Assembly (NCBI GenBank): GCA_002269645.1
Contig: NIVC01002664.1
Location: forward strand, 1 to 64,000
From: Macrostomum lignano
Taxonomy: Eukaryota
Reading direction: 5' to 3'
Length of the DNA: 64,000 nt
Shown here: one piece after another, positions 1 to 56,400 of the stretch
Numbering within the stretch: position 1 is the first letter of the stretch
How the letters are laid out: the number at the start of each line of letters is the position of its first letter
The notes under the pieces: generated by a model
What the model saw: the letters and a program-made list of their open reading frames with translations, nothing else
Told to the model about the DNA's origin: nothing
Databases searched by the model: none
Made by a program: the position numbers and the translations under genes

Positions 1-1645
1 TCTCCTCTCCTCTCCTTCCTCTCTCTCCTCCTCTCCTCCTCTCTCTTCTCTCTCATCTCCACTCTCCTCTCTCTCTCCTCTCCTCCCCTCTCCTCTCCTC
101 TCCTCCTCTCTCCTCTCCTCTCCTCTACTCTCTCTCTCCTCCTCTCATCTCCACTCTCCTCTCCTCTTTCTCTCTCTCCTCTCTCTCCTCCTCTCCTCTT
201 CTTCCTCTCCTCTATCCTCTCCTCTCCTTCTCTCTTCCTCTCCTCTCCTCTCTCCTCTCCTCTCCTCTCATCTCACTCTCCTCTCTCTCTCCTCTCCTCC
301 CCTCTCCTCTCCTCCTCTCTCTCTCTCTCCTCTCCTCTCATCTCCACTCTCCTCTCCTCTTTCTCTCCTCTCCTCTCCTCTCCTTTCCTCTCCTCTCCTC
401 TCCTCTTCTTCCTCTCCTTCCTCTCCTCTCCTCTCCTCTCCTCTCTCTCCTCTTCTCTCCTCTCCTTTCTCTCCTCTCCTTCCTTCCTCTCTCCTCTCTC
501 CCTCTCCCCTCTCCTCTCCTCTCCTCTCCTCTCCTCTTCTTCTCTCCTCTTCCTCTCCTCTCCTCTCCTCTCCTCTCCTCCTCTCCTCTCCTCTTCTCTC
601 CTCTCCTCTATCCTATCCTCTCCTTCCTCTCCTCTCTCTCCTCTCCTCTATCCTCTCCTCTCCTCTTTCTCTCCTCTCCTCTCCTCTCTCCTCTCTCCTC
701 TCCTCTCCTCTCCTCTCCTCTACTCTCCTTCTCTCCTCTCCTCTCCTCTCCTCTTCTCTCCTCTCCTCTATCCTTCCTCTCTCCTCTCCTCTCCTCTCTC
801 TCTCTCTCCTCTCCTCCTCTCCTCTCCTCTCCTCTCCTCTCCTCTTCTCTCATCTCCACTCTCCTCCTCCTCTTTCCTCCCTCTCCTCTCCTCTCCTCTC
901 CTCTCCTCTCTCTCCTCTCCTCTCTCTTCTCTCCTCTCTCTTCCTCTCCTCTTACTCTCCTCTCTCCTCTCCTCTCCTCTCCTCTCCTCTCCTCTCCTCT
1001 CCTCTCCTCTATCTCCTCTCTCCTCTCCTCTCCTCTCCTCTCTCCTCTCTCCTCTCCTCTCCTCTCCTCTCCTCTACTCTCCTCTCTCCTCTACTCTCCT
1101 CTCCTCTCCTCTTCTCTCCTCTCCTCTATCCTCTCCTCTCTCTCTCCTCTCCTCTCTCCTCTCCTTCCTCTCCTCTCTCTCTCCTCTCTCTCCTCTCCTC
1201 TTCTCTCATCTCCACTCTCCTCTCCTCTCTCTCCTCCCCTCTCCTCCTTCCTCTCCTCTCCTCTCCTCTCCTCTCTCTCCTCTCCTCTTCTCTCCTCTCC
1301 TCTATCCTCTCCTCTCCTCTCCTCTCCTCTCCTCTTCCTCTCTCTTCCTCTCTCTCCTCTCCTCTCCTCTCCTCTCCTCTCTCTACTCTCCTCTCCTCTC
1401 CTCTCTCCTCTCCTCTCCTCTCTCCTCTCCTCTCCTCTCCTCTCTCTCTCTCTCTCCTCTCCTCTCCTCTCCTCCTCCTCTCTCTCTCCTCTCTCCTCTC
1501 CTCTCCTCTCCTCTCTCCTCTCTCCTCTCCTCTCCTCTCCTCTCCTCTCCTCTCTCTCCTCTCTCTACTCTCCTCTCTCCTCTCTCTCCTCTCCTCTCCT
1601 CTCCTCTCCTCTCTCCTCTCCTCTCCTCTCTCCTCTCCTCTCCTA
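1..1645. repeat. CT-rich low-complexity microsatellite, degenerate (CTCCT)n
   Basis: Almost pure C/T sequence built from ctcct/ctct units; the 608..859 ORF is an artefact of it. Confidence 0.97.
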
Positions 1646-1899
1646 GCTCTTGATATTCATTAAGATTTTTTAGAATTCTATATTAGAATTCTAAAAACAT
1701 TTCCGTACATTTACGTACATTTCCTGTACCTAAAAATCATAAAAATGCATGGCACGGCTCTAATCTTTGGTTTTATGAATCTATTTTATCATCTCTGTTA
1801 CACATATTGTTACAAAGTCAGCTAAAGAATGACAAAATAGCTTCATAAAACTATAATGAGTCAAGCCGTGCCATTTATGGTTTTCTAGGCACAGGACCT

Positions 1900-42829: not shown

Positions 42830-45804
42830 CTCAAAATCATCATTGAGCCTGTTGGCAATTTCCAGTCGTCAAGGCCTACTAATTGGCCGATTTTTGTCTA
42901 GAAATGCGACAACTGCTCGCCACCTAGCTAGCGTGCCTAGTGCCAGTTTCAATGGCACCAATGGAAGCAGTCAGAGTCGAGGTCCTCAATGGGCTTCGAA
43001 AGTGGCACTTGTTAGCGGTGGATTCTTAGCTGGCTGCTGTCTGACAGTCTGGCAGTTGAGACGTCAGCGCAGCTTCAGCGAGGCTGCAGGCAGTGGCGTG
43101 GCTTTGGCTGCCAGCGCTAACAGGCCGACCCCGCCAACTAGCGTCAACCACATCGCCGATCTGGTGGAGCTGGTGTCTCCCACGGCAGTTAACATCCGGG
43201 TAGAGGGCAGCACGGCGCTGCACTCAATGCTTGGCATGCCCAGCTCGCAGGGCTCCGGGTTTATTATACGCGAGGATGGCCTTATTTTAACAAATGCTCA
43301 CGTGGCTGGAAGGTTTAAGGTGAGAACGGAGTAACCTGCTGTTGCTTGTTGGTTACCTGTGAATCTGTTATTAAAAGTCTAGGTGAAATCTCTGTGTATG
43401 GGACAATATTGGCGCCATCTCTGACACTACTGGTGCCATATTTGACACTATTGGCGCCATCTCTGATCTCTGACACTATTGGCGCCATCTCTGACACACT
43501 ATTGGCGCCATCTTCGACACACTACTGGCGCCAACTTTGACACATTTCTGGCGCCTTCTTTGACACACTACTGGCGCCATCTCTGAGATAATCGGCGCCA
43601 TCTCTAACACACTATTGGCGCCATCTCTGGCACACTATTGGCGCCATCTCTGACACGCTATCGGCGCCATCTCTAATACACTGTCGGCGCCGCTATCTTT
43701 GACACACTATTGGCGCCATCTCTGACAAACTATCGGCGCCATCTTTAACATAATCGGAGCAATCTCTGAGACATATCGGCACCATCTCTGATACACTATT
43801 GGCGCCATCTTCGACACACTATTGGCGCCATCTCTGACACTATTGTCGCCATATTTGACACTATTGGCGCCATCTCTGACACTATTGGCGCCATCTCTGA
43901 CACATTATTGGCGCCATCTCTGACACAATTGTTGCCATATCTGACACTATTAACGCCATCTTTGACACTATTGGCGCCATCTCTGACACACTATTGGCGC
44001 ATCTTCGATACACTACTGGTGCCTTCTTTGACACACTACTGGCGCCATCTCTGAGATAATCGGCGCCATCTCTAACACACTATTGGTGCCATCTCTGGCA
44101 CACTATTGGCGCCAACTCTGACACGCTATCGGCGCCATCTCTAGTACACTATCGGCGCCGCTATCTTTGACACACTATTGGCGCCATCTCTGACAAACTG
44201 TCGGCGCCATCTTTAAGATAATCGGAGCAATCTCTGACACGCGATTGGCGTCATCTCTGAGACAATCAGCGCCACTTTTATCTAATATATCGGTGATAAT
44301 ATCGGCGCTATTTTCTATCTTTCCAGATCTAGTACAGAAAAGTCTAGTATTGTTACTATAAAAAAGTACTTTATCACCATTATCAACGCAGGGCAGCCTG
44401 GTTGTCACCCTAACAGACGGTCGCGAGCTGCCCGCAGAGCTGATAGCTATAGACGCTGAGAGCGACATGGCTCTAGTGAAGGTGTCGGCTCGCGACCTTC
44501 CCGTGCTACCGTTGGGCCAGTCGAAGCGCTGCCGAGCTGGCGAATGGGTCATCGCGATTGGCTCTCCGCTGACCCTCAGCAACACGGTCACGGTTGGTAT
44601 TCTCAGCAATACAGCCAGAAATTTGGGCACCGGTAGCAATATTGAGTATCTGCAAACTGATGCCGCCATCACGTTTGGAAATTCTGGCGGGCCATTGGTG
44701 GATATGCATGGCCAGGTGAGCCCGGTATTTTTATTATTGCCTGTTTAACACCTGTTAGACAGAAGCTATACCTGTTAGACATAAGCTATACTTGTTAGAC
44801 AGAAGCTATACATGTTAGATAGAAGCTATACTTGTTAGATAGAAGCTATACTTGTTAGACAGAAGCTATACATGTTAGACAGAAGCTATACTTGTTAGAC
44901 AGAAGCTATACCTGTTAGACAGAAGCTATACTTGTTAGACATAAGCTATACTTGTTAGACAGAAGCTATACTTGTTAGACAGAAGCTATACTTGTTAGAC
45001 AGAAGCCTCACCTGTTAGACAGAAGCCTCACCTGTTATGCAGAAGCCTCGCCTGTTAGACGGAAGCTTTACCTGTTAGACAGGAGCCTCACCTGTTAGAC
45101 GGAAGCTTTACCTGTTAGACAGGAACCTCCCCTGTTAGACAGAAGCCTCACCTGTTACACAGAAGCCTCACCTGTTAGACAGAAGTCTTATCTGTTAGGC
45201 AGAAGCCTCACCTGTTAGACAGAAGCCTTATCTGTTAGGCAGAAGCCTCACCTGTTAGACAGAAGCCTTATCTGTTAGGCAGAAGCTTTACCTGTTAGAC
45301 AAAACCCTCAACTGTTAGACAGAAGCCTCACCTGTTAGACACAATTTCCGCGCACTTTTACTGCAGGCGATCGGCATCAACACGCTGAAAGCGGACGCTG
45401 GCATCAGCTTCGCCATTCCCATCGACGAGGCGAAGAATTTCGTAGACCAGGCCCTGTCCACCTCTCGCCAAGTGATCAGCCGTCCAAAGGCCTATCTGGG
45501 CCTCACGCTGCTGTCGCTCAACCCCACCATCGCCAGGCGGGTCTTCGGTCGCGATGGCATTGACAAAGGCGTCCTGGTGCACTCGGTTCACCCGGACTCG
45601 CCAGCTCAGCGGGCCGGCCTGGCCAGTTATGACGTCATTCTGACTGCGGACGGCGAGCCGGTTCGTCGGGTGTCCGATCTGCACCGCGCTGTTGCCAAGG
45701 CAACGCAACGAGGCGGTGGTAAATCTGTGACTGTTCGATTGCTGGTGCTGCGGTCTGGGCGCGAGCTTCAGCTGGATGTGCAGCCAGAACTGCAGGGCGG
45801 ATGA
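42830..45804 (+). CDS. HTRA2: HtrA2/Omi-like mitochondrial serine protease with a PDZ domain; exons ~42830-43319, 44392-44715, 45367-45804; start codon not located
   Basis: Transit-like N-terminus, TM segment VALVSGGFLAGCCLTVW, NHIADLVELVSPTAVNI; catalytic triad TNAHV / ESDMAL / GNSGGPL; PDZ YLGLTLLSL...DSPAQRAGL..DVIL. Phase-0 GT-AG junctions. Confidence 0.93.
43405..44275. repeat. Degenerate ~22-24-bp intronic minisatellite (actattggcgccatctctgacac)
   Basis: Repeated ggcgccatct core in HtrA2 intron 1. Confidence 0.9.
44745..45342. repeat. 20-bp intronic minisatellite (gttagacagaagctatactt, grading to ..gcctcacct)
   Basis: Fills nearly all of HtrA2 intron 2. Confidence 0.95.
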
Positions 45805-47254
45805 GTGGCTGGTGACTATGGCCAGGTTTAAAGCCATTGAGGAAATATTGAGTATCAGCTTCTGCCTGTCTTTACTGTGTCTTTGTGCCTGTGTGTCTGC
45901 TCTGTCTGTCTGCTCTGTCTGTTAGTTTTCCTGCTGCAAATCTTACTGAAAGTCTGCCATTGTTTCAGAAGATAAAGGATGCGAAAGAAGAGCTAGACAA
46001 GCTTATCCAGCGATTTAGTGTGTTAATATGGCTAGTAGACCTGCCGTCTTTGATGCTTAGTTGAATAAAATGCAAGTATTGACTCCCAGCATCGCCTATT
46101 ATTAGTTAATAAATAATTGTAATTAATTTTTTGCGCTCATAGTTTAATGTGTAGATATAATGAAAAGTTACTTGCTTAGAGACCGTGAGAGACACTGCAT
46201 ATTTCTAATGTCTTCGTTTGAAATTTCAATTTCATTAAATAGTTCATACTTTTAGTAATCAATGCAAATCAGGCACTTATTAGCAAATCCCAGATCCTCA
46301 TAATTCAGCTATTCTAATCCCAGATCCTCATAATTCAGCTATTCAAATCCCAGATCCTCATAATTCAGCTATTCTAATCCCAGATCCTCATAATTCAGCT
46401 ATTCGAATCCCAGATCCTCATAATTCAGCTATTCTAATCCCAGATCCTCATAATTCAGCTATTCAAATCCCAGATCCTCATAATTCAGCTATTCTAATCC
46501 CAGATCCTCATAATTCAGCTATTCAAATCCCAGATCCTCATAATTCAGCTATTCTAATCCCAGATCCTCATAATTCAGCTATTCAAATCCCAGATCCTCA
46601 TAATTTAGCTATTCAAATCCCAGATTCTCATAATTCAGCTATTCAAATCCCAGATCCTCATAATTCAGCTATTCAAATCCCAGATCCTCATAATTCAGCT
46701 ATTCAAATCCCAGATCCTCATAATTTAGCTATTCAAATCCCAGATTCTCATAATTCAGCTATTCAAATCCCAGATCCTCATAATTCAGCTATTCAAATCC
46801 CAGATCCTCATAATTCAGCCATTCAAATCCCAGATCCCCATAATTCAGCTATTTACGCTCGTAAGTCCCAGATCCTCATAACTCAGCTATTCAAATCCCA
46901 GATCCCACAATTCAGCCATTCAAATCCCAGATCCTCATAATTCAGCCATTCAAATCCCAGATCCTCATAATTCAGCTATTCAAATCCCAGATCCCCATAA
47001 TTCAGCTATTCAAATAATGTTCGTCTATTATTCGTCTATGTGCGAAACCATCTGCCCCCGTTTATATATCGACCCCAAACAAGCGACCAAATATATAAAA
47101 AAAATCATTCTCGGCCTAGCACCGATTACTGTGGCTTAATGCCAAGAACATAACATGGCATCGCAAGCAGCGATTTTGATGCACTGATTCATAAGTTGCA
47201 TCCTACACTGCATTCGGACATACGGAACCTGCCGACAGTCCAGAACCAGCTAGA

Positions 47255-48090
47255 ATGGCACCTCCATCTCCAAGTAGGGCTCCGACAATATCGCCATCTC
47301 GAGGGCACAGCAGTACTGCGGTCACAGGAAGCAGAGTCAGCTTGCCGGGCCTGCAGATACCACGCCTCGACCTGGCCACCGACACGGTCGACGAGTTCGA
47401 CGCGTGGAGAGCTACCATCGAGGCATACTTCGAAGCCATGGGAGTGCAAAAGTCCGACGCCGACAGCAATGAAGTGGCCGCGCAAAAGCGAGCAAACCGC
47501 AGAGCTTGCATCCTCAACTCTTTCTCTGCAACCACGTACAACAAGTACAAGAATCTGCCCCTCACAGAGGCTGAATTTCGGGATCCTGAGAAGGTGATCC
47601 AGACACTCCGTGCGCATCTAATCGGGCAAGTAAACATTATTGTTGAGCGAAATCGCTTTTGGACCCGGCAGCAGAAGGAGGGAGAAGCATTTTCTGATTT
47701 TTTGATGGAATTACGAGACCTCATGAGAACTTGTGCGTTTTGTCAGCATGCCGACGATCTATTGAGAGATAAAATTGTCCTGGGAATACGAAACCCGGAC
47801 ACTATTAGCCGAGCCAAAGCTTAGCTTATCAGAAGCGGTAACCATTTGCCAAGCTGAAGAAGCGTCTATCAAACAGCGGGACGAAATTTGCAAGTCAGCG
47901 AGCCTGAATGCGCTAAAAATATCTGCGTACAGGACGACTAAGCACCCGGGATTCCTAAAAGGACAACCCCAGACGAGCAAAAGTCAATCGTGTGGCTACT
48001 GCGGTAAGCAAAAGCACTCGGGTGAGACATGTCCGGCCAGAGACAAAACTTGTCGTCGCTGTGGCAAAAAGGGCACTTCGATAGAGTGTG
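47255..48090 (+). pseudogene. gag: Gypsy gag, broken by two apparent small deletions (~47805 and ~48072)
   Basis: Pieces lie in three frames: ...LLRDKIVLGIRNPDT / LLAEPKLSLSEAVTICQAEE...CGYCGKQKH..TCPARDKTCRRCGKK / GHFDRVCRSK. Confidence 0.8.
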
Positions 48091-51000
48091 CCGCTCGAAA
48101 AATACACTAAGCAAAAAACCCAGTGAATCGTCGCGAAAAGGAAGCATTCAATCGCTAATAGCCATGCTGCAACCTGATTGTCCCGTAGTGAATGTACAAA
48201 TCGGAGGTGTCACACTAACAATGATGCCCGACACTGGCTCAAATATAACCGCTATCAGAGTAGAAGACATGCAAAAGCTGGCAAGGAGGCCACGAATTTT
48301 AGAAGCCGCTGATGGTCCAACAGCCGCGAATGGACAGTACATGAAAGTAATAGGAAAGTTTCGCGACTCAATCTCGATCGGTGAGACCAAGATCACAACA
48401 GACATTTACGTTCTTGATCGCCTGACGGTACCGGTCTTGTCATGGAGAGCATGTGTTGATTTGGGAATAATTCCCAGGTATTTTCCTCGACAACAAATCA
48501 ACTCGATCGCCACAAGAACTGCTACAGCAGAAGACCTAATCAGCGAATTCCCGGCTGTATTCGATGGGATAGTAAGACCAATGAAGGGTGAAGCATTTTC
48601 GATCAAGCTTCGTGAAGACGCTCAACCTTTCTCCATTAAGACACCAAGGAGGATACCGTTCCCATTGTACGAGCGACTTAAAGCTGAGCTGGACTCGTTG
48701 GAAGCTCAGGAAATAATCTGCAAAGTCACTGCTCCTACGCAGTGGTGTGCACCAATAGTGGTGGCGCCAAAGAAAGACAATGGGATACGGATGTGCGTCG
48801 ACTTTCGGGAATTAAACAAATATGTTATTCGACCAAGGTACCAGTCTCAGACGCCATTGGAAGTCGTTGCAAGCACAGATGCTAGTCGCGCCAAGTATTT
48901 CTCTGTAGTTGACGCCTTGAAAGGATACCACCAAATACCGCTGGCTAAAGAAAGTATGCACCTGACAACGTTCATCACGCCGTTTGGTCGTTATATGTTT
49001 AGGATGGCACCATTCGGTATAAGCTCTATTTCTGAGTATTACAACCAGAGACTTGACGACACTTTTCAAGGACTCAAGGAAGTTCGGCATGTCGTTGATG
49101 ACTGTCTGGTCGCAACTTCTGACGAGGAATCACACGTACAAGCGGTTCGTCAGTTTCTGCAGCGCTGTCAAGACAATGGGGTAGCATTAAATAAAAAGAA
49201 GTTTGCATTTTGCAAGACTCAAATTGATTTTGCCGGATTTCGATTGTCAGCTGATGGCTACAGCATTGATCCGGAGCTTATGAAAGCGGTCAGAAAATTT
49301 CCCACTCCAAACAATATTACCGACCTACGCGCGTTCTTTGGCCTAGTCAACCAAGTCGGCACGTTTACGTCAGACATAGCAGAAGTCACAGCCTCGTTAA
49401 GGCCGCTGCTGTCCGAGAAGAATTTATTTCAATGGGGAGACGAACATCAAACGGCATTTGAAGAAGCCCGTCGCCGCCTGGCAATTGCTCCTACACTGGC
49501 CTATTATGACCAACGCAAGCCAACAGCCCTGCACACGGATGCATCTCGACTTAAGGGAATCGGATTCTTGCTCAAACAGCAGCAGACCGATGGAAGCTGG
49601 CGTGTGGTTCAAGCTGGCTCGAGATTCATTTCAGAGACCGAGTCACGCTATGCCATGATCGAGTTGGAACTGTTAGCTGTGGTCTGGGCGACTCAGAAGT
49701 GCAGACTCTTCCTTGAGGGGCTTCATGAGTTTGAAATTGTAACCGACCACAAGCCGCTGATACCAATCCTGAACAGTTACCAGCTGGATCAAATAGAAAA
49801 TCCCAGAATTCAGCGTCTTCGAGCGAAACTGAACCGCTACGTATACAAGGCGCGATGGGTAAAAGGCAAGGACAATGCCGACGCAGACGCTCTGTCGCGA
49901 GCACCAGTGGACAATCCGACTGCACAGGATGAACTGGGCGAGTCTGCAGATTTTCAACTTACCAATCAGCTCTTAATGCACCTCGAATCAGCAGAGCTGG
50001 ATCCTATTCTGCAAAGCGTGCGACAAAGCACAGCTTCTGATCAGGAGTTGCAAGACCTGATGCAATATATTCGGGATGGCTTTCCCAATGACAAGGCAAA
50101 CTTACCTCTTTGCATTCGGTCATTTTGGCATGTAAGAGACAAGCTCTCAGTCGACGACGGCATCATTCTATGCGGATGTCGTTGCGTCATACTACATGCA
50201 ATGAGGAAGCAGATTTTGACGGACTTACACGCAAGTCACCAAGGTCTGCACAAGACAAAGCAGAGAGCAAGGATGGTCGTCTACTGGCCTGGCATCGATC
50301 GGGACATTGAAAGTACAGTCAAGCAGTGTCAGTCCTGTCGGGAACATCTACCATCGCAGATCAGGGAGCCGATGACAACCCAGGACCAACCGGATCGATG
50401 TTTTCAACACATACATGCAGATTTCTGCGAGCATGCCGGCAAGAAGTTCCTTGTGCTCGTGGATGCATACTCAGGCTGGCCAGCGTTCTGTCATTTCGGT
50501 GATCGAGCACCCACGTACAAGCTGATAAACGCTTGCCGCGAATTCTTTTGCCAAACAGCTGTACCGGAGAAATTCTGTGCAGACTGTGGGCCACAATTTA
50601 AAGCACAGCCGTTCGTTAATTTTTTACGTCGCTGGGGTGTGAACATCAAATACTCATCTCCGTATTACCATCAAAGCAATGGAAGAGCAGAAGCTGCCGT
50701 GAAAAGTATAAAGAAGATCGTTCGAGGAGCATGGGACAGTCGCTTGAATGACTTGGACAAAGACAAGATGGCTCAGGGTTTGCTGCAGCTGCGAAACACG
50801 CCCATGTACGATGGCAGAATTCCATCTGTAATGGTCTATGGACACACAGTCAGAGACACGCTGCCCGCGCATAGGAAAAGTTTTGCAAAGGAATGGAAGG
50901 ACAAGGTCTGGAAAATGGAGGAAAAAGCTGCAGAAATTCACGCTAAAGTTCATCAACACTACAATGCTTCGAAGCGACAACTGGAACCTCTCCGAGTCGG

Positions 51001-51316
51001 CAGTCACGTTGTTCTTCAAAACCCTGTCACAAAGCTTTGGGACAAGAAGGGCGTCGTAGTAGAAGTTGGTCGGCACCAGGACTATATGGTCAAGTTAGTA
51101 AGCGGCCGAATTTTCCGTCGCAATCGTGTGTACATCCGCCGATGTCTACCACAAGAACAGCTCTCTACTACTGGTGCATCTCAGAAGGAAGGTGAAGCAC
51201 AGGACGCCCCGGACAAGCCAAAGACCGCACAGCCAAGGCGAAGTCAACGGTCGAACAAGGGAGTCCCGGCACCCAAGTTGCATTACAGGAAGTTGGGTGA
51301 ACCAGTTAACGCTTAA
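48029..51316 (+). CDS. pol: Gypsy pol (aspartic protease, RT, RNase H, integrase)
   Basis: DTGS; DALKGYHQ and VVDD; TDAS and TDHKPL; HHCC zinc finger (H.SH..YWPGI..C..C); integrase HADF, ADCGPQF, SNGRAEAAVK. Uninterrupted 1095-aa ORF. Confidence 0.95.
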   Translation: MSGQRQNLSSLWQKGHFDRVCRSKNTLSKKPSESSRKGSIQSLIAMLQPDCPVVNVQIGGVTLTMMPDTGSNITAIRVEDMQKLARRPRILEAADGPTAANGQYMKVIGKFRDSISIGETKITTDIYVLDRLTVPVLSWRACVDLGIIPRYFPRQQINSIATRTATAEDLISEFPAVFDGIVRPMKGEAFSIKLREDAQPFSIKTPRRIPFPLYERLKAELDSLEAQEIICKVTAPTQWCAPIVVAPKKDNGIRMCVDFRELNKYVIRPRYQSQTPLEVVASTDASRAKYFSVVDALKGYHQIPLAKESMHLTTFITPFGRYMFRMAPFGISSISEYYNQRLDDTFQGLKEVRHVVDDCLVATSDEESHVQAVRQFLQRCQDNGVALNKKKFAFCKTQIDFAGFRLSADGYSIDPELMKAVRKFPTPNNITDLRAFFGLVNQVGTFTSDIAEVTASLRPLLSEKNLFQWGDEHQTAFEEARRRLAIAPTLAYYDQRKPTALHTDASRLKGIGFLLKQQQTDGSWRVVQAGSRFISETESRYAMIELELLAVVWATQKCRLFLEGLHEFEIVTDHKPLIPILNSYQLDQIENPRIQRLRAKLNRYVYKARWVKGKDNADADALSRAPVDNPTAQDELGESADFQLTNQLLMHLESAELDPILQSVRQSTASDQELQDLMQYIRDGFPNDKANLPLCIRSFWHVRDKLSVDDGIILCGCRCVILHAMRKQILTDLHASHQGLHKTKQRARMVVYWPGIDRDIESTVKQCQSCREHLPSQIREPMTTQDQPDRCFQHIHADFCEHAGKKFLVLVDAYSGWPAFCHFGDRAPTYKLINACREFFCQTAVPEKFCADCGPQFKAQPFVNFLRRWGVNIKYSSPYYHQSNGRAEAAVKSIKKIVRGAWDSRLNDLDKDKMAQGLLQLRNTPMYDGRIPSVMVYGHTVRDTLPAHRKSFAKEWKDKVWKMEEKAAEIHAKVHQHYNASKRQLEPLRVGSHVVLQNPVTKLWDKKGVVVEVGRHQDYMVKLVSGRIFRRNRVYIRRCLPQEQLSTTGASQKEGEAQDAPDKPKTAQPRRSQRSNKGVPAPKLHYRKLGEPVNA

Positions 51317-51595
51317 AAGGGGAGATGAGGAAGAAAGAACTGTAAAACTGTTTTGCTTAAAAGGGGAGATGTTGTGTGCGTATGCGAATATTCGTCTATG
51401 TGCGAAACCATCTGCCCCCGTTTATATATCGACCCCAAACAAGCGACCAAATATATAAAAAAAATCATTCTCGGCCTAGCACCGATTACTGTGGCTTAAT
51501 GCCAAGAACATAACACAAATCCCAGATTCTCACAATTCAGCCATTCAAATCCCAGATCCTCATAATTCAGCTGAACTCCCAATTCCCCTTTCCAG

Positions 51596-52156
51596 GCGAC
51601 TGCAGCTGTCCGGTCTCTGCTGCTCCTGTGCCTGCTGCTCCCAGCCAGCAGCTCGGCCGAGCAGAAGAAGCCGCTGTCCGAGTACTCTGACGCAGACTTG
51701 GAGCGACTCTACAAGCAGTGGGAAGAAAGCGATCCGGACTCGGAGCCCGAGAGCACCAGCTGGAAGAGCCCACAGTTGGATCTGACCAAGGTGCCGGATT
51801 TGACAGATCCCACACTAATCCTGCAGAACTCCAGCCGTGGCCAGCCGGTGCCTCTGATTGTCCGCATCGCTGGAGCCGAGGGTCGCGACTCCGTATGGCT
51901 GGAGAATCTGTCGCGCAACTGGCAGCTGGAGATGTTCAACGCTCACATGGAGACAACTAGGCGAGTTGTAGAAGACGGCACGGTGCAACTGATCGCTCTT
52001 GATGGCTCTCAGGTGGTGAAAGTGCGCGAATATTTGCTAGCCCAGCCTAACTGTTATTCTGTCACTATCGAGGGTCACACTGTACTCGGTAGGGGCGCTC
52101 CAGCTGCTGAAGTGGCCGCTGCTGCCGCTGCTAAAGCCAAAAAGACTGAACTATGA
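51596..52156 (+). CDS. MESD: LRP chaperone MESD (Boca); single exon lacking its own ATG
   Basis: After acceptor cccctttccag|: ATAAVRSLLLLCLLLPASSSA (signal peptide), KKPLSEYSDADLERLYKQWEE, WQLEMFNAH, DGSQVVKVREYLLAQPNCYSVTIEG, and a C-terminal KTEL ER-retention signal. Confidence 0.9.
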   Translation, partial: ATAAVRSLLLLCLLLPASSSAEQKKPLSEYSDADLERLYKQWEESDPDSEPESTSWKSPQLDLTKVPDLTDPTLILQNSSRGQPVPLIVRIAGAEGRDSVWLENLSRNWQLEMFNAHMETTRRVVEDGTVQLIALDGSQVVKVREYLLAQPNCYSVTIEGHTVLGRGAPAAEVAAAAAAKAKKTEL

Positions 52157-52344: not shown

Positions 52345-52738
52345 ATAAAGTACATTCAGGTCTGTCCCCTCCTGAATGTACATTTACACCTCTACCCCCT
52401 CCAGGGTGTACATTCACAGCTCTACCCCTCAGAGTGTACATTTACATCTCTACCCTCTCCCAGAGTGTACATTCACAGCTCTACCCTCTCCCAGAGTGTA
52501 CATTTACAGCTCTACCCTCTCCCAGAGTGTACATTCACAGCTCTACCCTCTCCCAGAGTGTACATTTACAGCTCTACCCCCCAGAGTGTACATTCACAGC
52601 TCTACCCTCTCCCAGAGTGTACATTTACAGCTCTACCCCCTCCAGAGTGTACATTTACAGCTCTACCCTCTCCCAGAGTGTACATTTACAGCTCTACCCC
52701 CTCCAAAGTGTACATTCACAGCTCTACCCTCCAGTGTA
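52345..52738. repeat. ~30-bp minisatellite (cagagtgtacatttacagctctaccctctcc)
   Basis: Direct tandem copies. Confidence 0.93.
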
Positions 52739-53441: not shown

Positions 53442-56400
53442 GAGCCGCTTGATTTCTGCCAACTGTTTGGGCGACAGTTTGGCCTCCCGTTCGGCGACAC
53501 GCTGTGCCACCGATTCCGTCAGCTCTTTGAGCTCCGGGAAGTCGTCGAGATTGTCGATTAGCGGGATCAGCAGTGGCTCGATGCTTGGGTGCTTGCTGGC
53601 TGGAATTGGGCGATGCAGGTGAATTGAGACTGCATTCTTGATGGGCCGAGTGATAGACGGGAATGTACACTCGATTGGGATAGAGAGGCTGTATGTACAT
53701 TCTTGATAGGTGGAGTGGTGATAGTGAAACTGTACACTCGATTGGGATAGAGAGGCTGTGTGTACATTCTTGATAGGCGGAGTGGTAGAGGGGATTGTAA
53801 TATTCCTGCACGAAAACGAGACGCACGAGTTTGCGTGTAGGAAAATCATTGTCTTTTGACCATAGACAAAGTCATTCCTGCACGGTTTTCGAGAAACGTT
53901 AAGAAGAGATGAAAATTGAGTGGAGAGTTTATAGAAAAGTGTATAAAGCTTATTGACTATGGCGTCTGTAATCGACTCGGCTCTGAATCCTCCATTAATT
54001 GATTTTCGCTATGCTACGGTGTCTGGATTAATTGGCGACGAAATGTTTATTGAAAGTGTGTCCAGCAACTTTGAGAGGACGGGCGACGATTTGACTCCAC
54101 TGATAGCGGATTGCACGTTCAGCGAGGAATTAGAGAAACTTTTCAGCTCGGATCCGGAAACCTTGTGTAACCTTGACGAATTGGAAAGTCTGGCCGCTCA
54201 ACTGGAACGCGACAACGAATGTCATTCGACTGTCTCTAAGGATAAAGCTGTGATCAACCGCTTGACGGCCTGGTTGGCGGAGAATAATTTAAAAGTGGAT
54301 TACGCGACTGCTTCGGTGGAAGAAATTGCCAAATGGGTCCGCTACTTCTATGCGACTCTGCGTAAGTCAGACGGCAGCTTCTATTCGCCGAATACAATCG
54401 TAGGAATTCGAGCCGCACTGTTCAGGTACTTTATGAAATTACGTGGCCTCAATATCATCGCTCACGAGGCTTTTCATAGCGCGAATTTGATGGTGAAGAA
54501 TGTTTGCAATGCGTATTTGAAGTCCGGTGGTCGAGTGCAGCATTACGAAGCCATTGAGTCGGACGACCTTGTCAAGCTTGCTTCTTACTTCGACAGAAGC
54601 ACTCCAACACGTTTGCAAGAAGAGGTATATTTCAATGTGTTATTTTATTTCGGCAATCGCGGCAGAGAATGGCTACGAGGTCTCACTGTTCGTTCATTCC
54701 GAGAGAAGGCCCTATCAAACGGAGCTATGGCGATCGAGTTGCAAGGCAGCACCTCAAAGAATGTAAAAGGCTCGAGTGACATGCGACTCTGCGACGACAA
54801 TAAACAGGCCTTGATGGTGGCCAAGCCGGAGTCAAGGCACTGTCCAGTTCAGGCCTTCCAGCTTTATTTGTCGAAAATTACTGCCGTGCCGGGTTGGAAT
54901 CAGGAGGACTTCTTTCTGCGTCCGAAACCACGAGTGAATGCGGATGGCATCTGGTACACCAAAGTACCAGTTGGAATCAACACTTTGGGGCCGTTGCTCA
55001 AGAAGATCTCTTCGAATGCTAACCTGTCCAAGCTGTACACTCCGCATTGTGTGCGACCTACAGTTGTTACGGAGCTGCATGAAGCTGGCTTTTCTGTCGA
55101 AAAAATTGCGAAGGTGACAGGTCACAAGGTGAGCAATTCTTTATTCTTAGTAAGTTTATTGACACATGGACAAGGAATTTATTAAACACCACCTCTATTC
55201 ACAGAATAGCGCGTCGGTAGAACGATACATCTGGAGAGGCAAGAAGAGGGACTCGATCATGGCAGGGATGAGTGATCAGCTGACAGTCGCTCTAGCTGGA
55301 ACTATGCCGGCACCAAGTTCTACATTGAGCGAAGCTCCTGCAAGGGCTGTTACAACTACCGACCCGTGCGCCCTGAGCGACGCTCCTACAAGGGCTGTTG
55401 CGACTACCGACCCGTGCGGATCAGCGTCAATGTCAACTTTCAAGAAGTCACTGGTTGTTGAAGAATCGACCACCACACTTGTAGCAGCCCCCACTAAGCG
55501 GATGAAGATTTTGGCAAACGGCGAAACGAATGTTGTGCAGTTTATTTTCGAGTAAATGCCGAGAGGGGTGTGAGTAGGTCTATAGACTCATTAACTGTTT
55601 CCCTAGTTCCACTTATTATCCTTTTTGTTCTTCCATATTGTTATTGATTACATATTAAGTTGCTTCTAAAAATAAATTGTTAAATCGTGCAGGAATGAAG
55701 TCATTCCTGCACGATAAGCTAACGTATGTCAAGTGATTTCTACCATAGACACAGACATTCCTGCACGATAATAAATCGAAAAAAATCATTCCTGCACGCT
55801 GTGGTCAAACGACAATGTACACTCGATTGGGATAGAAAGGCTGTATGTACATTCTTGATAGGCGGAGTGATAGAGGGGATTGTACACTCGATTGGGATAG
55901 AAAGGCTGTATGTACATTCTTGATAGGCGGAGTGGTGATTGTGAGACTGTATACTCGATTGGGATAGAGAGGCTGTATGTACATTCTCGATAGGCGGAGT
56001 GGTAGATATCTCTAGGCGGAGTGGTAAATATCTCTAGGCGAGATATGTACACTGTAGTACATGTAGGAGGATAATTAAAAACTTTAAGGAACAAAATACA
56101 GTGTACATTGTTTTTATCGATGCAGGCAGTGGTGAGCACTATAGGGTTCTGATGCTCCCGGTTCTAGGAAATATTGATTTTTTATTCTTATCAATTCGAA
56201 TGAGATCATTCTTTGATTAAGCGTTTAAGACTTCCGGGAAGTGAACTACAATTAATCAATCTATGAAAGCTTTTGAACTCCCACCCTTCCTACAATAGTT
56301 TAAATGAAATTAAAAGATACAAAGTACTATAGTTATCCAATAAACCTAATTGGAATTGAAAAAAACATTAGAAGCGCTTTTCACTGTAAAGACTTTTATA

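What the first reader, a model, noticed from the sequence alone, without database searches (positions are those of the whole stretch)
51585..52156. MESD has no ATG; its start codon may come from a trans-spliced leader
Seen: the whole MESD ORF, including the signal peptide, follows a strong acceptor (cccctttccag|GCG) in phase 0, with no in-frame ATG until well inside the mature domain. I found no convincing phase-0 donor exon between the HtrA2 3' end and the minisatellite. Known: flatworm spliced leaders end in AUG, which can act as the initiator Met. Adding it gives MATAAVRSLLLLCLLLPASSSA, a well-formed signal peptide. Inference: translation and ER targeting of this gene depend on SL trans-splicing.
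Basis: partly seen in the sequence, partly recalled or inferred. Interest (0 to 1): 0.75.

Follow-up and report, generated by a model that had tools for sequence, protein, structure and literature searches.

The report
Flatworm MESD gene lacking its own ATG
This is the ER chaperone gene MESD of the flatworm Macrostomum lignano: it has no start codon of its own and most probably takes its AUG from the trans-spliced leader, a mechanism already described in flatworms, so it is a good example rather than a discovery.

Summary
Window 51596-52156 is a full-length MESD/boca ORF (Pfam Mesd, E 6e-26). It has a signal peptide and a C-terminal KTEL but no initiator Met. It starts directly after ccccTTTCCAG|, an in-frame TGA lies 8 codons upstream, and the first in-frame ATG is codon 113.

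The window is Macrostomum lignano (assembly Mlig_3_7, NIVC01002664.1). About 30% of this species' genes are SL trans-spliced. Its 35-nt leader ends in ATG, and the trans-acceptor motif is [T/C]TNCAG, which this site matches.

Three genomic copies share the identical ATG-less junction and an intact ORF under purifying selection (7 synonymous : 2 non-synonymous changes). GenBank models are single-exon and 5'-partial. In one copy HtrA2 and MESD are genes g1 and g2 of one transcriptional unit.

No SL-junction transcript could be reached, so use of the SL AUG is inferred (about 0.72). One rival survives. A 25-nt exon (46160-46184, GTGAGA donor) could cis-splice to a second acceptor at 51606 and would also be in frame.

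SL-AUG initiation was shown in Schistosoma in 2006, so this is a new member of a known kind.

The parts
42830..45804 (+). Upstream gene HtrA2 (serine protease plus PDZ). Exons are 42852(42849)-43319, 44392-44715 and 45367-45804. It is PAA56095.1 (Mlig032997g1, partial).
   Evidence: The 409-aa model rebuilt with canonical GT-AG sites is an exact match in the collection. Trypsin and PDZ Pfam hits are listed. In this copy the start codon position reads CTG (42849). The two other copies have ATG there.
46064..46113 (+). HtrA2 poly(A) signals: AATAAA at 46064 and at 46108.
   Evidence: Pattern scan. Conserved in all three copies (alignment).
46160..46190 (+). Rival cis-exon candidate ATGAAAAGTTACTTGCTTAGAGACC followed by donor GTGAGA (phase 1).
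   Evidence: It is in frame only with the second acceptor (exon start 51606). The ATG is ATA in copy L004. It is not part of any GenBank model.
46284..47015 (+). 30-bp minisatellite (CAAATCCCAGATCCTCATAATTCAGCTATT, 24 copies). It forms the bulk of the HtrA2-MESD spacer, which is the putative outron.
   Evidence: TRF and repeats. Also present in L001 and L004, at clearly different array lengths.
47017..51515 (+). Intact Ty3/gypsy-type LTR retrotransposon inserted inside the minisatellite, in this copy only. 5' LTR about 47017-47155, primer-binding site TGGCATCGC at 47156, gag 47255-47824, pol 48029-51316, polypurine tract 51359-51369, 3' LTR about 51370-51515.
   Evidence: The 127-nt LTR cores are 100% identical. 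Pfam domain order is protease, RT, RNase H, integrase. The element is absent from L001 and L004. The flanks are compatible with a 5-bp CAAAT target duplication.
51516..51572 (+). The last two minisatellite units, cut off from the array by the retrotransposon.
   Evidence: family D3. The same units precede the acceptor in L001 and L004.
51572..51574 (+). In-frame TGA that closes the MESD reading frame upstream.
51576..51595 (+). Polypyrimidine tract and 3' splice acceptor ctcccaattcccctTTCCAG|. This is the proposed SL trans-splice site.
   Evidence: Matches the motif [T/C]TNCAG of M. lignano SL acceptors (PMC8629364). Identical in three copies.
51596..52156 (+). MESD/boca ORF: 186 codons plus TGA, with no ATG before codon 113.
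   Evidence: The GenBank CDS (P0003) starts at 51617 and is 5'-partial.
51596..51658 (+). Signal peptide without its Met, ATAAVRSLLLLCLLLPASSSA. Predicted cleavage is SSA|EQ.
   Evidence: Read from the sequence: R in the n-region, a 9-residue hydrophobic core, and small residues at -3 and -1. It aligns with the signal peptides of orthologues. No signal-peptide predictor was available.
51600..51605 (+). Second acceptor-like site CTGCAG|, with the exon starting at 51606.
   Evidence: It also fits [T/C]TNCAG. SL-ATG joined here would be out of frame. It is the acceptor that the cis-exon rival needs.
51665..52105 (+). Mesd domain (residues 24-170).
   Evidence: PF10185, 91.6 bits.
52142..52153 (+). 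C-terminal KTEL, an ER-retention-type motif.
   Evidence: Twelve of the 13 aligned sequences, this one included, end in -EL and one ends in -DL; Plakobranchus MESD also ends KTEL.
52377..52731 (+). 31-bp minisatellite downstream of MESD.
   Evidence: TRF.

Best explanation
The window carries one of three Macrostomum lignano copies of the single-exon MESD/boca gene, an ER chaperone for LDL-receptor-family proteins. The gene encodes a complete pre-protein except for its initiator codon. The proposed mechanism has four steps.

1. The region is transcribed as part of a longer precursor. This is either read-through from HtrA2, since the two genes are g1 and g2 of one transcriptional unit in a sister copy, or transcription from a nearby start.
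2. The upstream part (unique spacer, minisatellite and, in this copy, the retrotransposon) behaves as an outron.
3. The 35-nt spliced leader ...UUAUUGCAUG is trans-spliced to the acceptor TTCCAG|GCG at 51596.
4. The leader's 3'-terminal AUG becomes codon 1, giving MATAAVRSLLLLCLLLPASSSA|EQKK..., a functional signal peptide. Synthesis and ER entry of MESD therefore depend on trans-splicing.

Shown here: the ORF anatomy, the absence of a genomic ATG, the acceptor motif and phase, the species and its SL sequence, conservation and purifying selection in three copies, and the 5'-partial single-exon RNA-seq-guided models. Inferred: that the SL is actually joined at 51596 and that its AUG is the one used.
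For: Species: M. lignano.

SL biology: the SL ends in ATG, about 30% of genes are trans-spliced, and the trans-acceptor motif is [T/C]TNCAG (PMC8629364). The terminal ATG is conserved in the genus and is called a translation start codon (PMC10468722).

ORF: it is full length minus the Met when compared with 12 orthologues. An in-frame stop lies 8 codons upstream and the first ATG is codon 113.

Conservation: the three paralogous loci have an identical junction and intact ORFs, with 7 synonymous and 2 non-synonymous differences (P=0.0013 under neutrality).

Alternatives: no phase-0 ATG-donor exon with a usable donor exists in the spacer.

Annotation: GenBank models PAA60838.1 and P0003 are single-exon and 5'-partial. 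In L001, HtrA2 is Mlig011032g1 and MESD is Mlig011032g2. By the authors' naming these are two genes cut out of one transcriptional unit using SL and poly(A) signals (PMC5730564).

Operon criterion: the repeat-adjusted HtrA2-MESD distance is roughly 0.3 kb, below the 1-kb operon threshold of PMC8629364.

Precedent: in S. mansoni the SL AUG is in frame in 28% of trans-spliced mRNAs and more than 40 cDNAs need it (Cheng 2006, as cited in PMC9851317).
Against: No SL-MESD junction sequence was seen. Exact look-ups of MATAAV... failed, and no transcript-derived protein for this gene is in the collections.

The 'partial' flag is weak evidence. HtrA2 is also annotated 5'-partial, although two of its three copies carry a genomic ATG directly before or within one codon of the annotated start.

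The annotated MESD CDS starts 21-24 nt downstream of the acceptor, not at it.

A second consensus acceptor lies 10 nt downstream (51600-51605). With it, the SL AUG would be out of frame, whereas a cis exon at 46160-46184 would be in frame.

The -3 position of the SL AUG is U, which is a poor Kozak context.
Confidence: 0.72

Rival explanations
1. A short cis-spliced first exon supplies the ATG. The exon is 46160-46184 (ATGAAAAGTTACTTGCTTAGAGACC) with donor GTGAGA. It is spliced to the second acceptor CTGCAG|, with the downstream exon starting at 51606. The product would be MKSYLLRDPVRSLLLLCLLLPASSSA..., also a plausible signal peptide. The minisatellite, and here the retrotransposon, would then be an ordinary intron.
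For: The donor matches the M. lignano cis-donor consensus GT[G/A]AG. The phase fits the second acceptor, and the joined sequence translates without a stop into full-length MESD. The exon is present in both the window and L001. Flatworm acceptors are often shared between cis- and trans-splicing (PMC12582326).
Against: In the third copy (L004) the ATG is ATA, yet the ORF is intact. The model needs the second AG to be used, although the first CAG sits directly after the polypyrimidine tract. The RNA-seq-guided GenBank models at two loci have no such exon and are 5'-partial. The ATG lies only about 50-95 nt past the HtrA2 poly(A) signals. With two acceptors in different phases, two thirds of random ATG-donor pairs would fit one of them, and about one GTRAG is expected by chance in the roughly 400-nt spacer, so the match is not statistically notable.
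Confidence: 0.12
2. Translation starts at a near-cognate codon, such as CUG at 51617 or one of the four CUGs that follow. The mRNA would be either not trans-spliced, or trans-spliced in a way that leaves the SL AUG unused.
For: Five in-frame CTG codons lie in the hydrophobic core region. The GenBank CDS happens to begin at the first of them. The HtrA2 copy in this window also has CTG where its paralogues have ATG. Non-AUG initiation on SL-bearing mRNAs has been reported in other taxa (PMC9851317).
Against: Starting at CUG-8 would remove the charged n-region (R6) of the signal peptide. An in-frame AUG at the very 5' end would be met first by a scanning ribosome on a trans-spliced mRNA. Neither the CUG context nor any data point to this.
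Confidence: 0.06
3. The missing ATG reflects a decaying or unexpressed gene copy, or an assembly or annotation artefact, and a functional MESD with its own ATG lies elsewhere in the genome.
For: The window copy has a retrotransposon 80 nt upstream. Its HtrA2 neighbour has lost its ATG. M. lignano is a hidden polyploid with many redundant copies.
Against: All three copies found lack the ATG and have identical junctions. The ORFs are intact, with a 7:2 excess of synonymous changes. Both protein searches found no other M. lignano MESD. The closest other sequence is only 35% identical.
Confidence: 0.04

Closest known systems
SL-AUG-initiated mRNAs of flatworms (Cheng, Cohen, Ndegwa & Davis 2006, J Biol Chem 281:733; called 'slORFs' in PMC9851317)
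   Same: The spliced leader ends in AUG. The acceptor sits in phase 0 directly before an ORF that has no AUG of its own. The SL AUG therefore acts as the initiator Met.
   Different: The earlier work was done in Schistosoma mansoni. Here the species is the free-living Macrostomum lignano and the client is MESD, so the SL-supplied Met heads a signal peptide. Use of the SL at this site is inferred here, not observed.
MESD / boca family (Pfam PF10185; LDLR/LRP chaperone of the ER)
   Same: Mesd domain over residues 24-170, an N-terminal signal peptide, a C-terminal KTEL, and about 35% identity to animal orthologues over the full length.
   Different: The aligned orthologues all start with Met, and the one whose DNA was read (P0004) has a genomic ATG. 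The closest relative found (P0004, Logan DRR639838) has its ATG 6 nt after an acceptor-like ttttattttgcag. The three M. lignano copies have none.
M. lignano operons / polycistronic transcriptional units (Wudarski 2017; Ustyantsev & Berezikov 2021)
   Same: HtrA2 and MESD are same-strand neighbours and are named g1 and g2 of one transcriptional unit. The spacer consists mostly of repeats, and the repeat-adjusted distance is below 1 kb.
   Different: In the window copy the spacer additionally holds a 4.5-kb LTR retrotransposon, and HtrA2 there belongs to a differently named unit (Mlig032997). Trans-splicing of either gene was not seen directly.
Ty3/gypsy LTR retrotransposons
   Same: Short LTRs, a TGG... 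primer-binding site, a polypurine tract, gag, and pol in the order protease, RT, RNase H, integrase.
   Different: It is not part of the gene. It matters only as a recent insertion into the putative outron, in the same orientation, 80 nt upstream of the acceptor.

Membership tests
MESD/boca (PF10185) | Mesd domain above Pfam's gathering score | tested here: met
   91.6 bits against a cut-off of 24.4, covering profile positions 1-147 of 155.
MESD/boca (PF10185) | N-terminal signal peptide and C-terminal ER-retention tetrapeptide | tested here: met
   (M)ATAAVRSLLLLCLLLPASSSA and KTEL were read from the sequence and align with orthologue signal peptides and xEL ends. No SignalP run was possible.
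SL-AUG-initiated flatworm mRNA | The organism trans-splices an SL whose last three bases are AUG | tested here: met
   The species was identified as M. lignano. The SL sequence comes from PMC8629364.
SL-AUG-initiated flatworm mRNA | A consensus acceptor lies immediately 5' of the ORF, in phase 0 with it | tested here: met
   TTCCAG|GCG at 51590-51598 fits [T/C]TNCAG, and 51596 is codon position 1.
SL-AUG-initiated flatworm mRNA | No genomic AUG is able to start the full-length protein | tested here: inconclusive
   There is none within the exon (TGA at 51572, first ATG at codon 113) and there is no phase-0 cis exon. However, a phase-1 exon at 46160-46184 joined to the acceptor at 51606 would be in frame.
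SL-AUG-initiated flatworm mRNA | Mature transcripts carry the SL joined at that acceptor | not testable with these tools
   No M. lignano transcript or read data could be reached. The exact look-up of MATAAV... was negative. The supplements searched did not list the gene.
SL-AUG-initiated flatworm mRNA | Translation initiates on the SL AUG | not testable with these tools
   This needs initiation-site ribosome profiling or reporter assays.
M. lignano operon (Ustyantsev & Berezikov 2021 criteria) | Same-strand neighbours with a repeat-adjusted intergenic distance below 1 kb | tested here: met
   From the HtrA2 poly(A) signals (46064, 46108) to the acceptor at 51596, subtracting the minisatellite and the retrotransposon, leaves roughly 0.3 kb.
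M. lignano operon (Ustyantsev & Berezikov 2021 criteria) | The downstream gene is SL trans-spliced and both genes lie in one transcriptional unit | tested here: inconclusive
   The g1/g2 names of one unit in copy L001 (naming) support a shared unit. The SL signal itself was not seen, and the window copy's HtrA2 has a different unit name.
Ty3/gypsy LTR retrotransposon | Paired LTRs flanking gag and pol in the order protease, RT, RNase H, integrase | tested here: met
   Identical 127-nt LTR cores and the Pfam domain order. The first 10-20 nt of the two LTRs differ, and the target-site duplication (CAAAT) is ambiguous because the target is itself a repeat.

The most novel reading that the evidence does not exclude
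MESD, and with it the maturation of LRP/LDLR-family (Wnt co-receptor) proteins, depends entirely on SL trans-splicing in Macrostomum. The 5'UTR, cap and AUG all come from the leader, so the gene would be indifferent to whatever lies upstream. It would stay functional as the downstream gene of an HtrA2 operon, behind a hypervariable minisatellite, and even with a young 4.5-kb LTR retrotransposon (or its 3' LTR promoter) in the outron. By extension, a sizeable share of the '5'-partial' CDSs in the M. lignano annotation would be complete, SL-initiated ORFs that standard gene callers cannot close.
Probability: 0.35. Interest if true: 0.5.

Novelty: new member of a known kind. Interest (0 to 1): 0.3.

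Why it matters
If the leader supplies the AUG, this essential secretory-pathway chaperone cannot be made without trans-splicing.

It would be a clean, testable case in a transgenic model flatworm of the SL acting as a coding element that heads a signal peptide, and not only as a 5'UTR.

It also has a practical side. ATG-dependent gene finders and TransDecoder-style pipelines will report such genes as partial or miss them altogether. The third copy is unannotated, and no UniProt model for this gene turned up in the searches. Annotation pipelines for flatworms should therefore test SL-ATG-prefixed ORFs.

The retrotransposon in the putative outron of one copy offers a natural experiment on how far trans-spliced genes tolerate upstream insertions.

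None of this changes current understanding of the mechanism, which has been known since 2006.

Tried and rejected
- **Direct transcript evidence.** Exact look-ups of the ORF and of two MATAAV... variants were not in the 15-billion-protein collection. The P0001 cluster holds only the two GenBank models. No Logan or other transcript-derived M. lignano MESD appeared in either protein search.
- **Literature and supplements.** The gene IDs Mlig011032, Mlig032997 and Mlig008974 occur in no held paper. The supplements of PMC5173321, PMC5816591 and PMC5730564 do not list MESD, and PMC8629364 has no held supplement. Cheng 2006 and Wasik 2015 are not held, so Cheng 2006 is cited only through papers that quote it.
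- **Orthologues in other flatworms.** The exhaustive representative search and a profile search returned molluscs, insects, nematodes and unnamed contigs, but no named flatworm and no other Macrostomum. The 'same missing ATG in related species' test could therefore not be done. The closest sequence (P0004, unknown organism) has its own ATG.
- **HtrA2 exon 1 as query.** This found nothing. I rebuilt the full model and used an exact look-up instead.
- **SL RNA gene in the window.** None within 3 mismatches, and no Rfam family anywhere in the window.
- **SL-like stretch in the MESD exon (51611-51623).** Its score is in the top 1.6% of the window background, which I judged to be chance. The HtrA2 5' exon shows no significant SL similarity.
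- **Conserved GTAAGT in the minisatellite as a cis donor.** Rejected, because no ATG is in frame upstream of it.
- **A fusion from the HtrA2 exon-1 donor (phase 0) to the MESD acceptor.** Rejected as implausible, because it would bury the signal peptide behind a mitochondrial presequence.

Full report
**What is at the coordinates.** Window 51596-52156 translates to a 186-residue protein, ATAAVRSLLLLCLLLPASSSAEQKKPLSEYSDADLERLYKQWEE...KTEL, followed by TGA. Pfam assigns it to Mesd (PF10185, 91.6 bits, residues 24-170). Homology searches return LDLR/LRP chaperones MESD/boca from many animals at about 30-37% identity.

In an alignment with 12 orthologues the protein is full length. Every orthologue begins with Met followed by a 15-30-residue signal peptide, and all but one end in -EL (one in -DL). 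The window ORF has the signal peptide and KTEL but not the Met.

The frame is open only from 51575, after a TGA at 51572-74. It holds no ATG until residue 113 (51932). Directly upstream lies ctcccaattcccctTTCCAG|GCG, with 51596 as codon position 1.

**Whose genome it is.** The best hit (99%) is PAA60838.1, 'BOX15_Mlig011032g2, partial', from Macrostomum lignano. The window's own copy is P0003 on NIVC01002664.1, and that record is identical to window 41617-62156. This matters because M. lignano does SL trans-splicing:
- About 30% of its genes receive one 35-nt leader, CGGTCTCTTACTGCGAAGACTCAATTTATTGCATG.
- The top motif at trans-acceptors is [T/C]TNCAG (PMC8629364).
- TTCCAG fits that motif.
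- The leader's final ATG is conserved in the genus and has been called a translation start codon (PMC10468722).
- All reported flatworm SLs end in ATG (PMC12582326).

The SL AUG as initiator was established for Schistosoma mansoni by Cheng et al. 2006. [quoted passage not shown] I could not read Cheng 2006 itself.

**Surroundings.** Upstream on the same strand is HtrA2, with three exons and its stop at 45804. After it come, in order:
- Two AATAAA signals, at 46064 and 46108.
- About 170 nt of unique sequence.
- A 30-bp minisatellite at 46284-47015.
- An intact Ty3/gypsy-type LTR retrotransposon at about 47017-51515. Its 127-nt LTR cores are identical. It has gag at 47255-47824 and a 1095-aa pol with protease, RT, RNase H and integrase. 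This finding's text does not mention it.
- Two further minisatellite units at 51516-51572, and then the acceptor.

The element therefore inserted into the minisatellite, in the same orientation as MESD, 80 nt upstream of the acceptor.

**Related loci.** The same HtrA2-to-MESD arrangement occurs on two more scaffolds of the assembly. These are L001 (NIVC01002104.1) and L004 (NIVC01002013.1). Both lack the retrotransposon, and their minisatellite arrays differ clearly in length.

In all three copies the 110 nt before and 60 nt after the acceptor are identical, the ORF is intact, and there is no ATG. Across the three ORFs there are nine variable sites, seven synonymous and two non-synonymous. The probability of that excess under neutrality is 0.0013. 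The ATG-less gene is thus a maintained coding sequence. It is not an assembly slip or a dead copy.

**What the public annotation adds.** The GenBank models are RNA-seq-guided (StringTie/TACO, then TBONE, then TransDecoder; PMC5730564). At both annotated loci MESD is a single-exon, 5'-partial CDS, starting at LLLLCLLL in the window and at LLLCLLL in L001.

In L001, HtrA2 is PAA60837.1 Mlig011032g1 and MESD is PAA60838.1 Mlig011032g2. In the authors' scheme, g1 and g2 are genes cut out of one transcriptional unit with SL and poly(A) signals. This fits a polycistronic precursor in which the downstream gene is trans-spliced. The repeat-adjusted spacer of roughly 0.3 kb is also below the 1-kb operon threshold.

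There is a caveat. HtrA2 is also annotated 5'-partial, although L001 and L004 carry a genomic ATG directly before or within one codon of the annotated start (the window copy has CTG there). The 'partial' flag on its own is therefore weak. Within each locus the two genes' annotated starts lie almost the same distance downstream of an AG acceptor. That distance is +22 and +21 in the window and +25 and +24 in L001. This looks like a pipeline effect at spliced 5' ends, but I cannot prove it.

**Alternatives.** I scanned the spacer of all three copies for ATG...GT exons that keep the frame.

For the acceptor at 51596 (phase 0), only MASRPA|GTCTTT and MQ|GTATTG are shared. Both lie in the HtrA2 3'UTR and both have poor donors.

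A second site, CTGCAG| (exon start 51606), also fits the acceptor motif. The SL joined there would be out of frame. A 25-nt exon at 46160-46184, ATGAAAAGTTACTTGCTTAGAGACC with the good donor GTGAGA, would be in frame and would give MKSYLLRDPVRSLLLLCLLLPASSSA.... Against this rival:
- The ATG is ATA in L004.
- It needs the distal AG to be used.
- No GenBank model contains the exon.
- With two acceptor phases available, the match is not improbable by chance.

I give it about 0.12. Near-cognate CUG initiation (about 0.06) and a pseudogene or artefact (about 0.04) are less likely. The remaining few per cent is left for explanations I have not thought of.

**What could not be done.** No SL-junction transcript was reachable:
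- Exact look-ups of MATAAV... proteins failed.
- No transcript-derived M. lignano MESD exists in the protein collections.
- No held paper or supplement lists the gene.
- No flatworm orthologue was recovered for the 'same missing ATG' test.
- The closest relative (P0004, 35% identity, organism unknown) has ATG 6 nt after an acceptor-like ttttattttgcag. That would fit loss of a gene-borne ATG next to a trans-splice site, but this is conjecture.

The mechanism is textbook for flatworms. This is a new, tidy example in a known class, with two added points of local interest. The SL-supplied Met heads a signal peptide, and one copy carries a young retrotransposon in the putative outron. Interest is modest at 0.3.

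Noticed in passing
window 47017-51515: An apparently intact LTR retrotransposon (gag, and pol with protease, RT, RNase H and integrase) with 100% identical 127-nt LTR cores. It is inserted inside the 30-bp minisatellite and is absent from the two sister loci. The first 10-20 nt of the two LTRs differ (5' TGTTCGTCTAT..., 3' TGTTGTGTGCGTATGCGAA...), which is unexpected for a young element.
   Followed up: partly
window 42849-42851 (compare L001:6010, L004:9998): The HtrA2 start codon is ATG in two genomic copies but CTG in the window copy. All three GenBank HtrA2 models are nevertheless '5'-partial' and begin within one codon downstream of that codon. Either this copy has lost its start, or it uses CUG.
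   Followed up: partly
window 42852 and 51617; L001 6016 and 10001; L004 10001: Annotated CDS starts of both HtrA2 and MESD lie at a near-constant distance downstream of a consensus AG acceptor. The distances are +22 and +21 in the window and +25 and +24 in L001, with +22 for HtrA2 in L004. This suggests a systematic 5' truncation of models at (trans-)spliced ends in the Mlig_3_7 annotation.
   Followed up: partly
window 51611-51623: The MESD exon contains CGGTCTC-TGCTGC, which resembles the first 14 nt of the spliced leader (CGGTCTCTTACTGC). The local alignment score is in the top 1.6% of the window background, so this is probably chance. It could still confuse SL-trimming software.
   Followed up: yes
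L004:15290-15850 (NIVC01002013.1): A third, intact MESD copy (K183N, ending KNTEL) has no gene model listed at that place, although the neighbouring HtrA2 is annotated.
   Followed up: partly
window 53953-55185 (+); also L001:12631-14176: An ORF with DUF3504 and a weak tyrosine-recombinase (Phage_integrase) match, which looks like a Crypton-type element or a gene derived from one. It lies downstream of MESD and is conserved in the sister locus.
   Followed up: no
window 43466-44264, 44750-45341, 46284-47015, 52377-52731: Four long minisatellites (23, 20, 30 and 31 bp units) fill both HtrA2 introns, the HtrA2-MESD spacer and the region after MESD. The 30-bp array differs clearly in length between the three loci, and one odd unit carries a conserved GTAAGT (46861).
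   Followed up: partly
window 1-1650: An extreme strand-asymmetric low-complexity block (GC skew -0.89, AT skew -0.69; C/T-rich, open in all three forward frames as S/L/P repeats).
   Followed up: no
L003:340-372 (Logan DRR639838 contig): The closest non-Macrostomum MESD (35% identity, organism unknown) is also single-exon. Its ATG lies 6 nt after an acceptor-like ttttattttgcag, an arrangement from which loss of the gene's own ATG next to a trans-splice site could have evolved.
   Followed up: no
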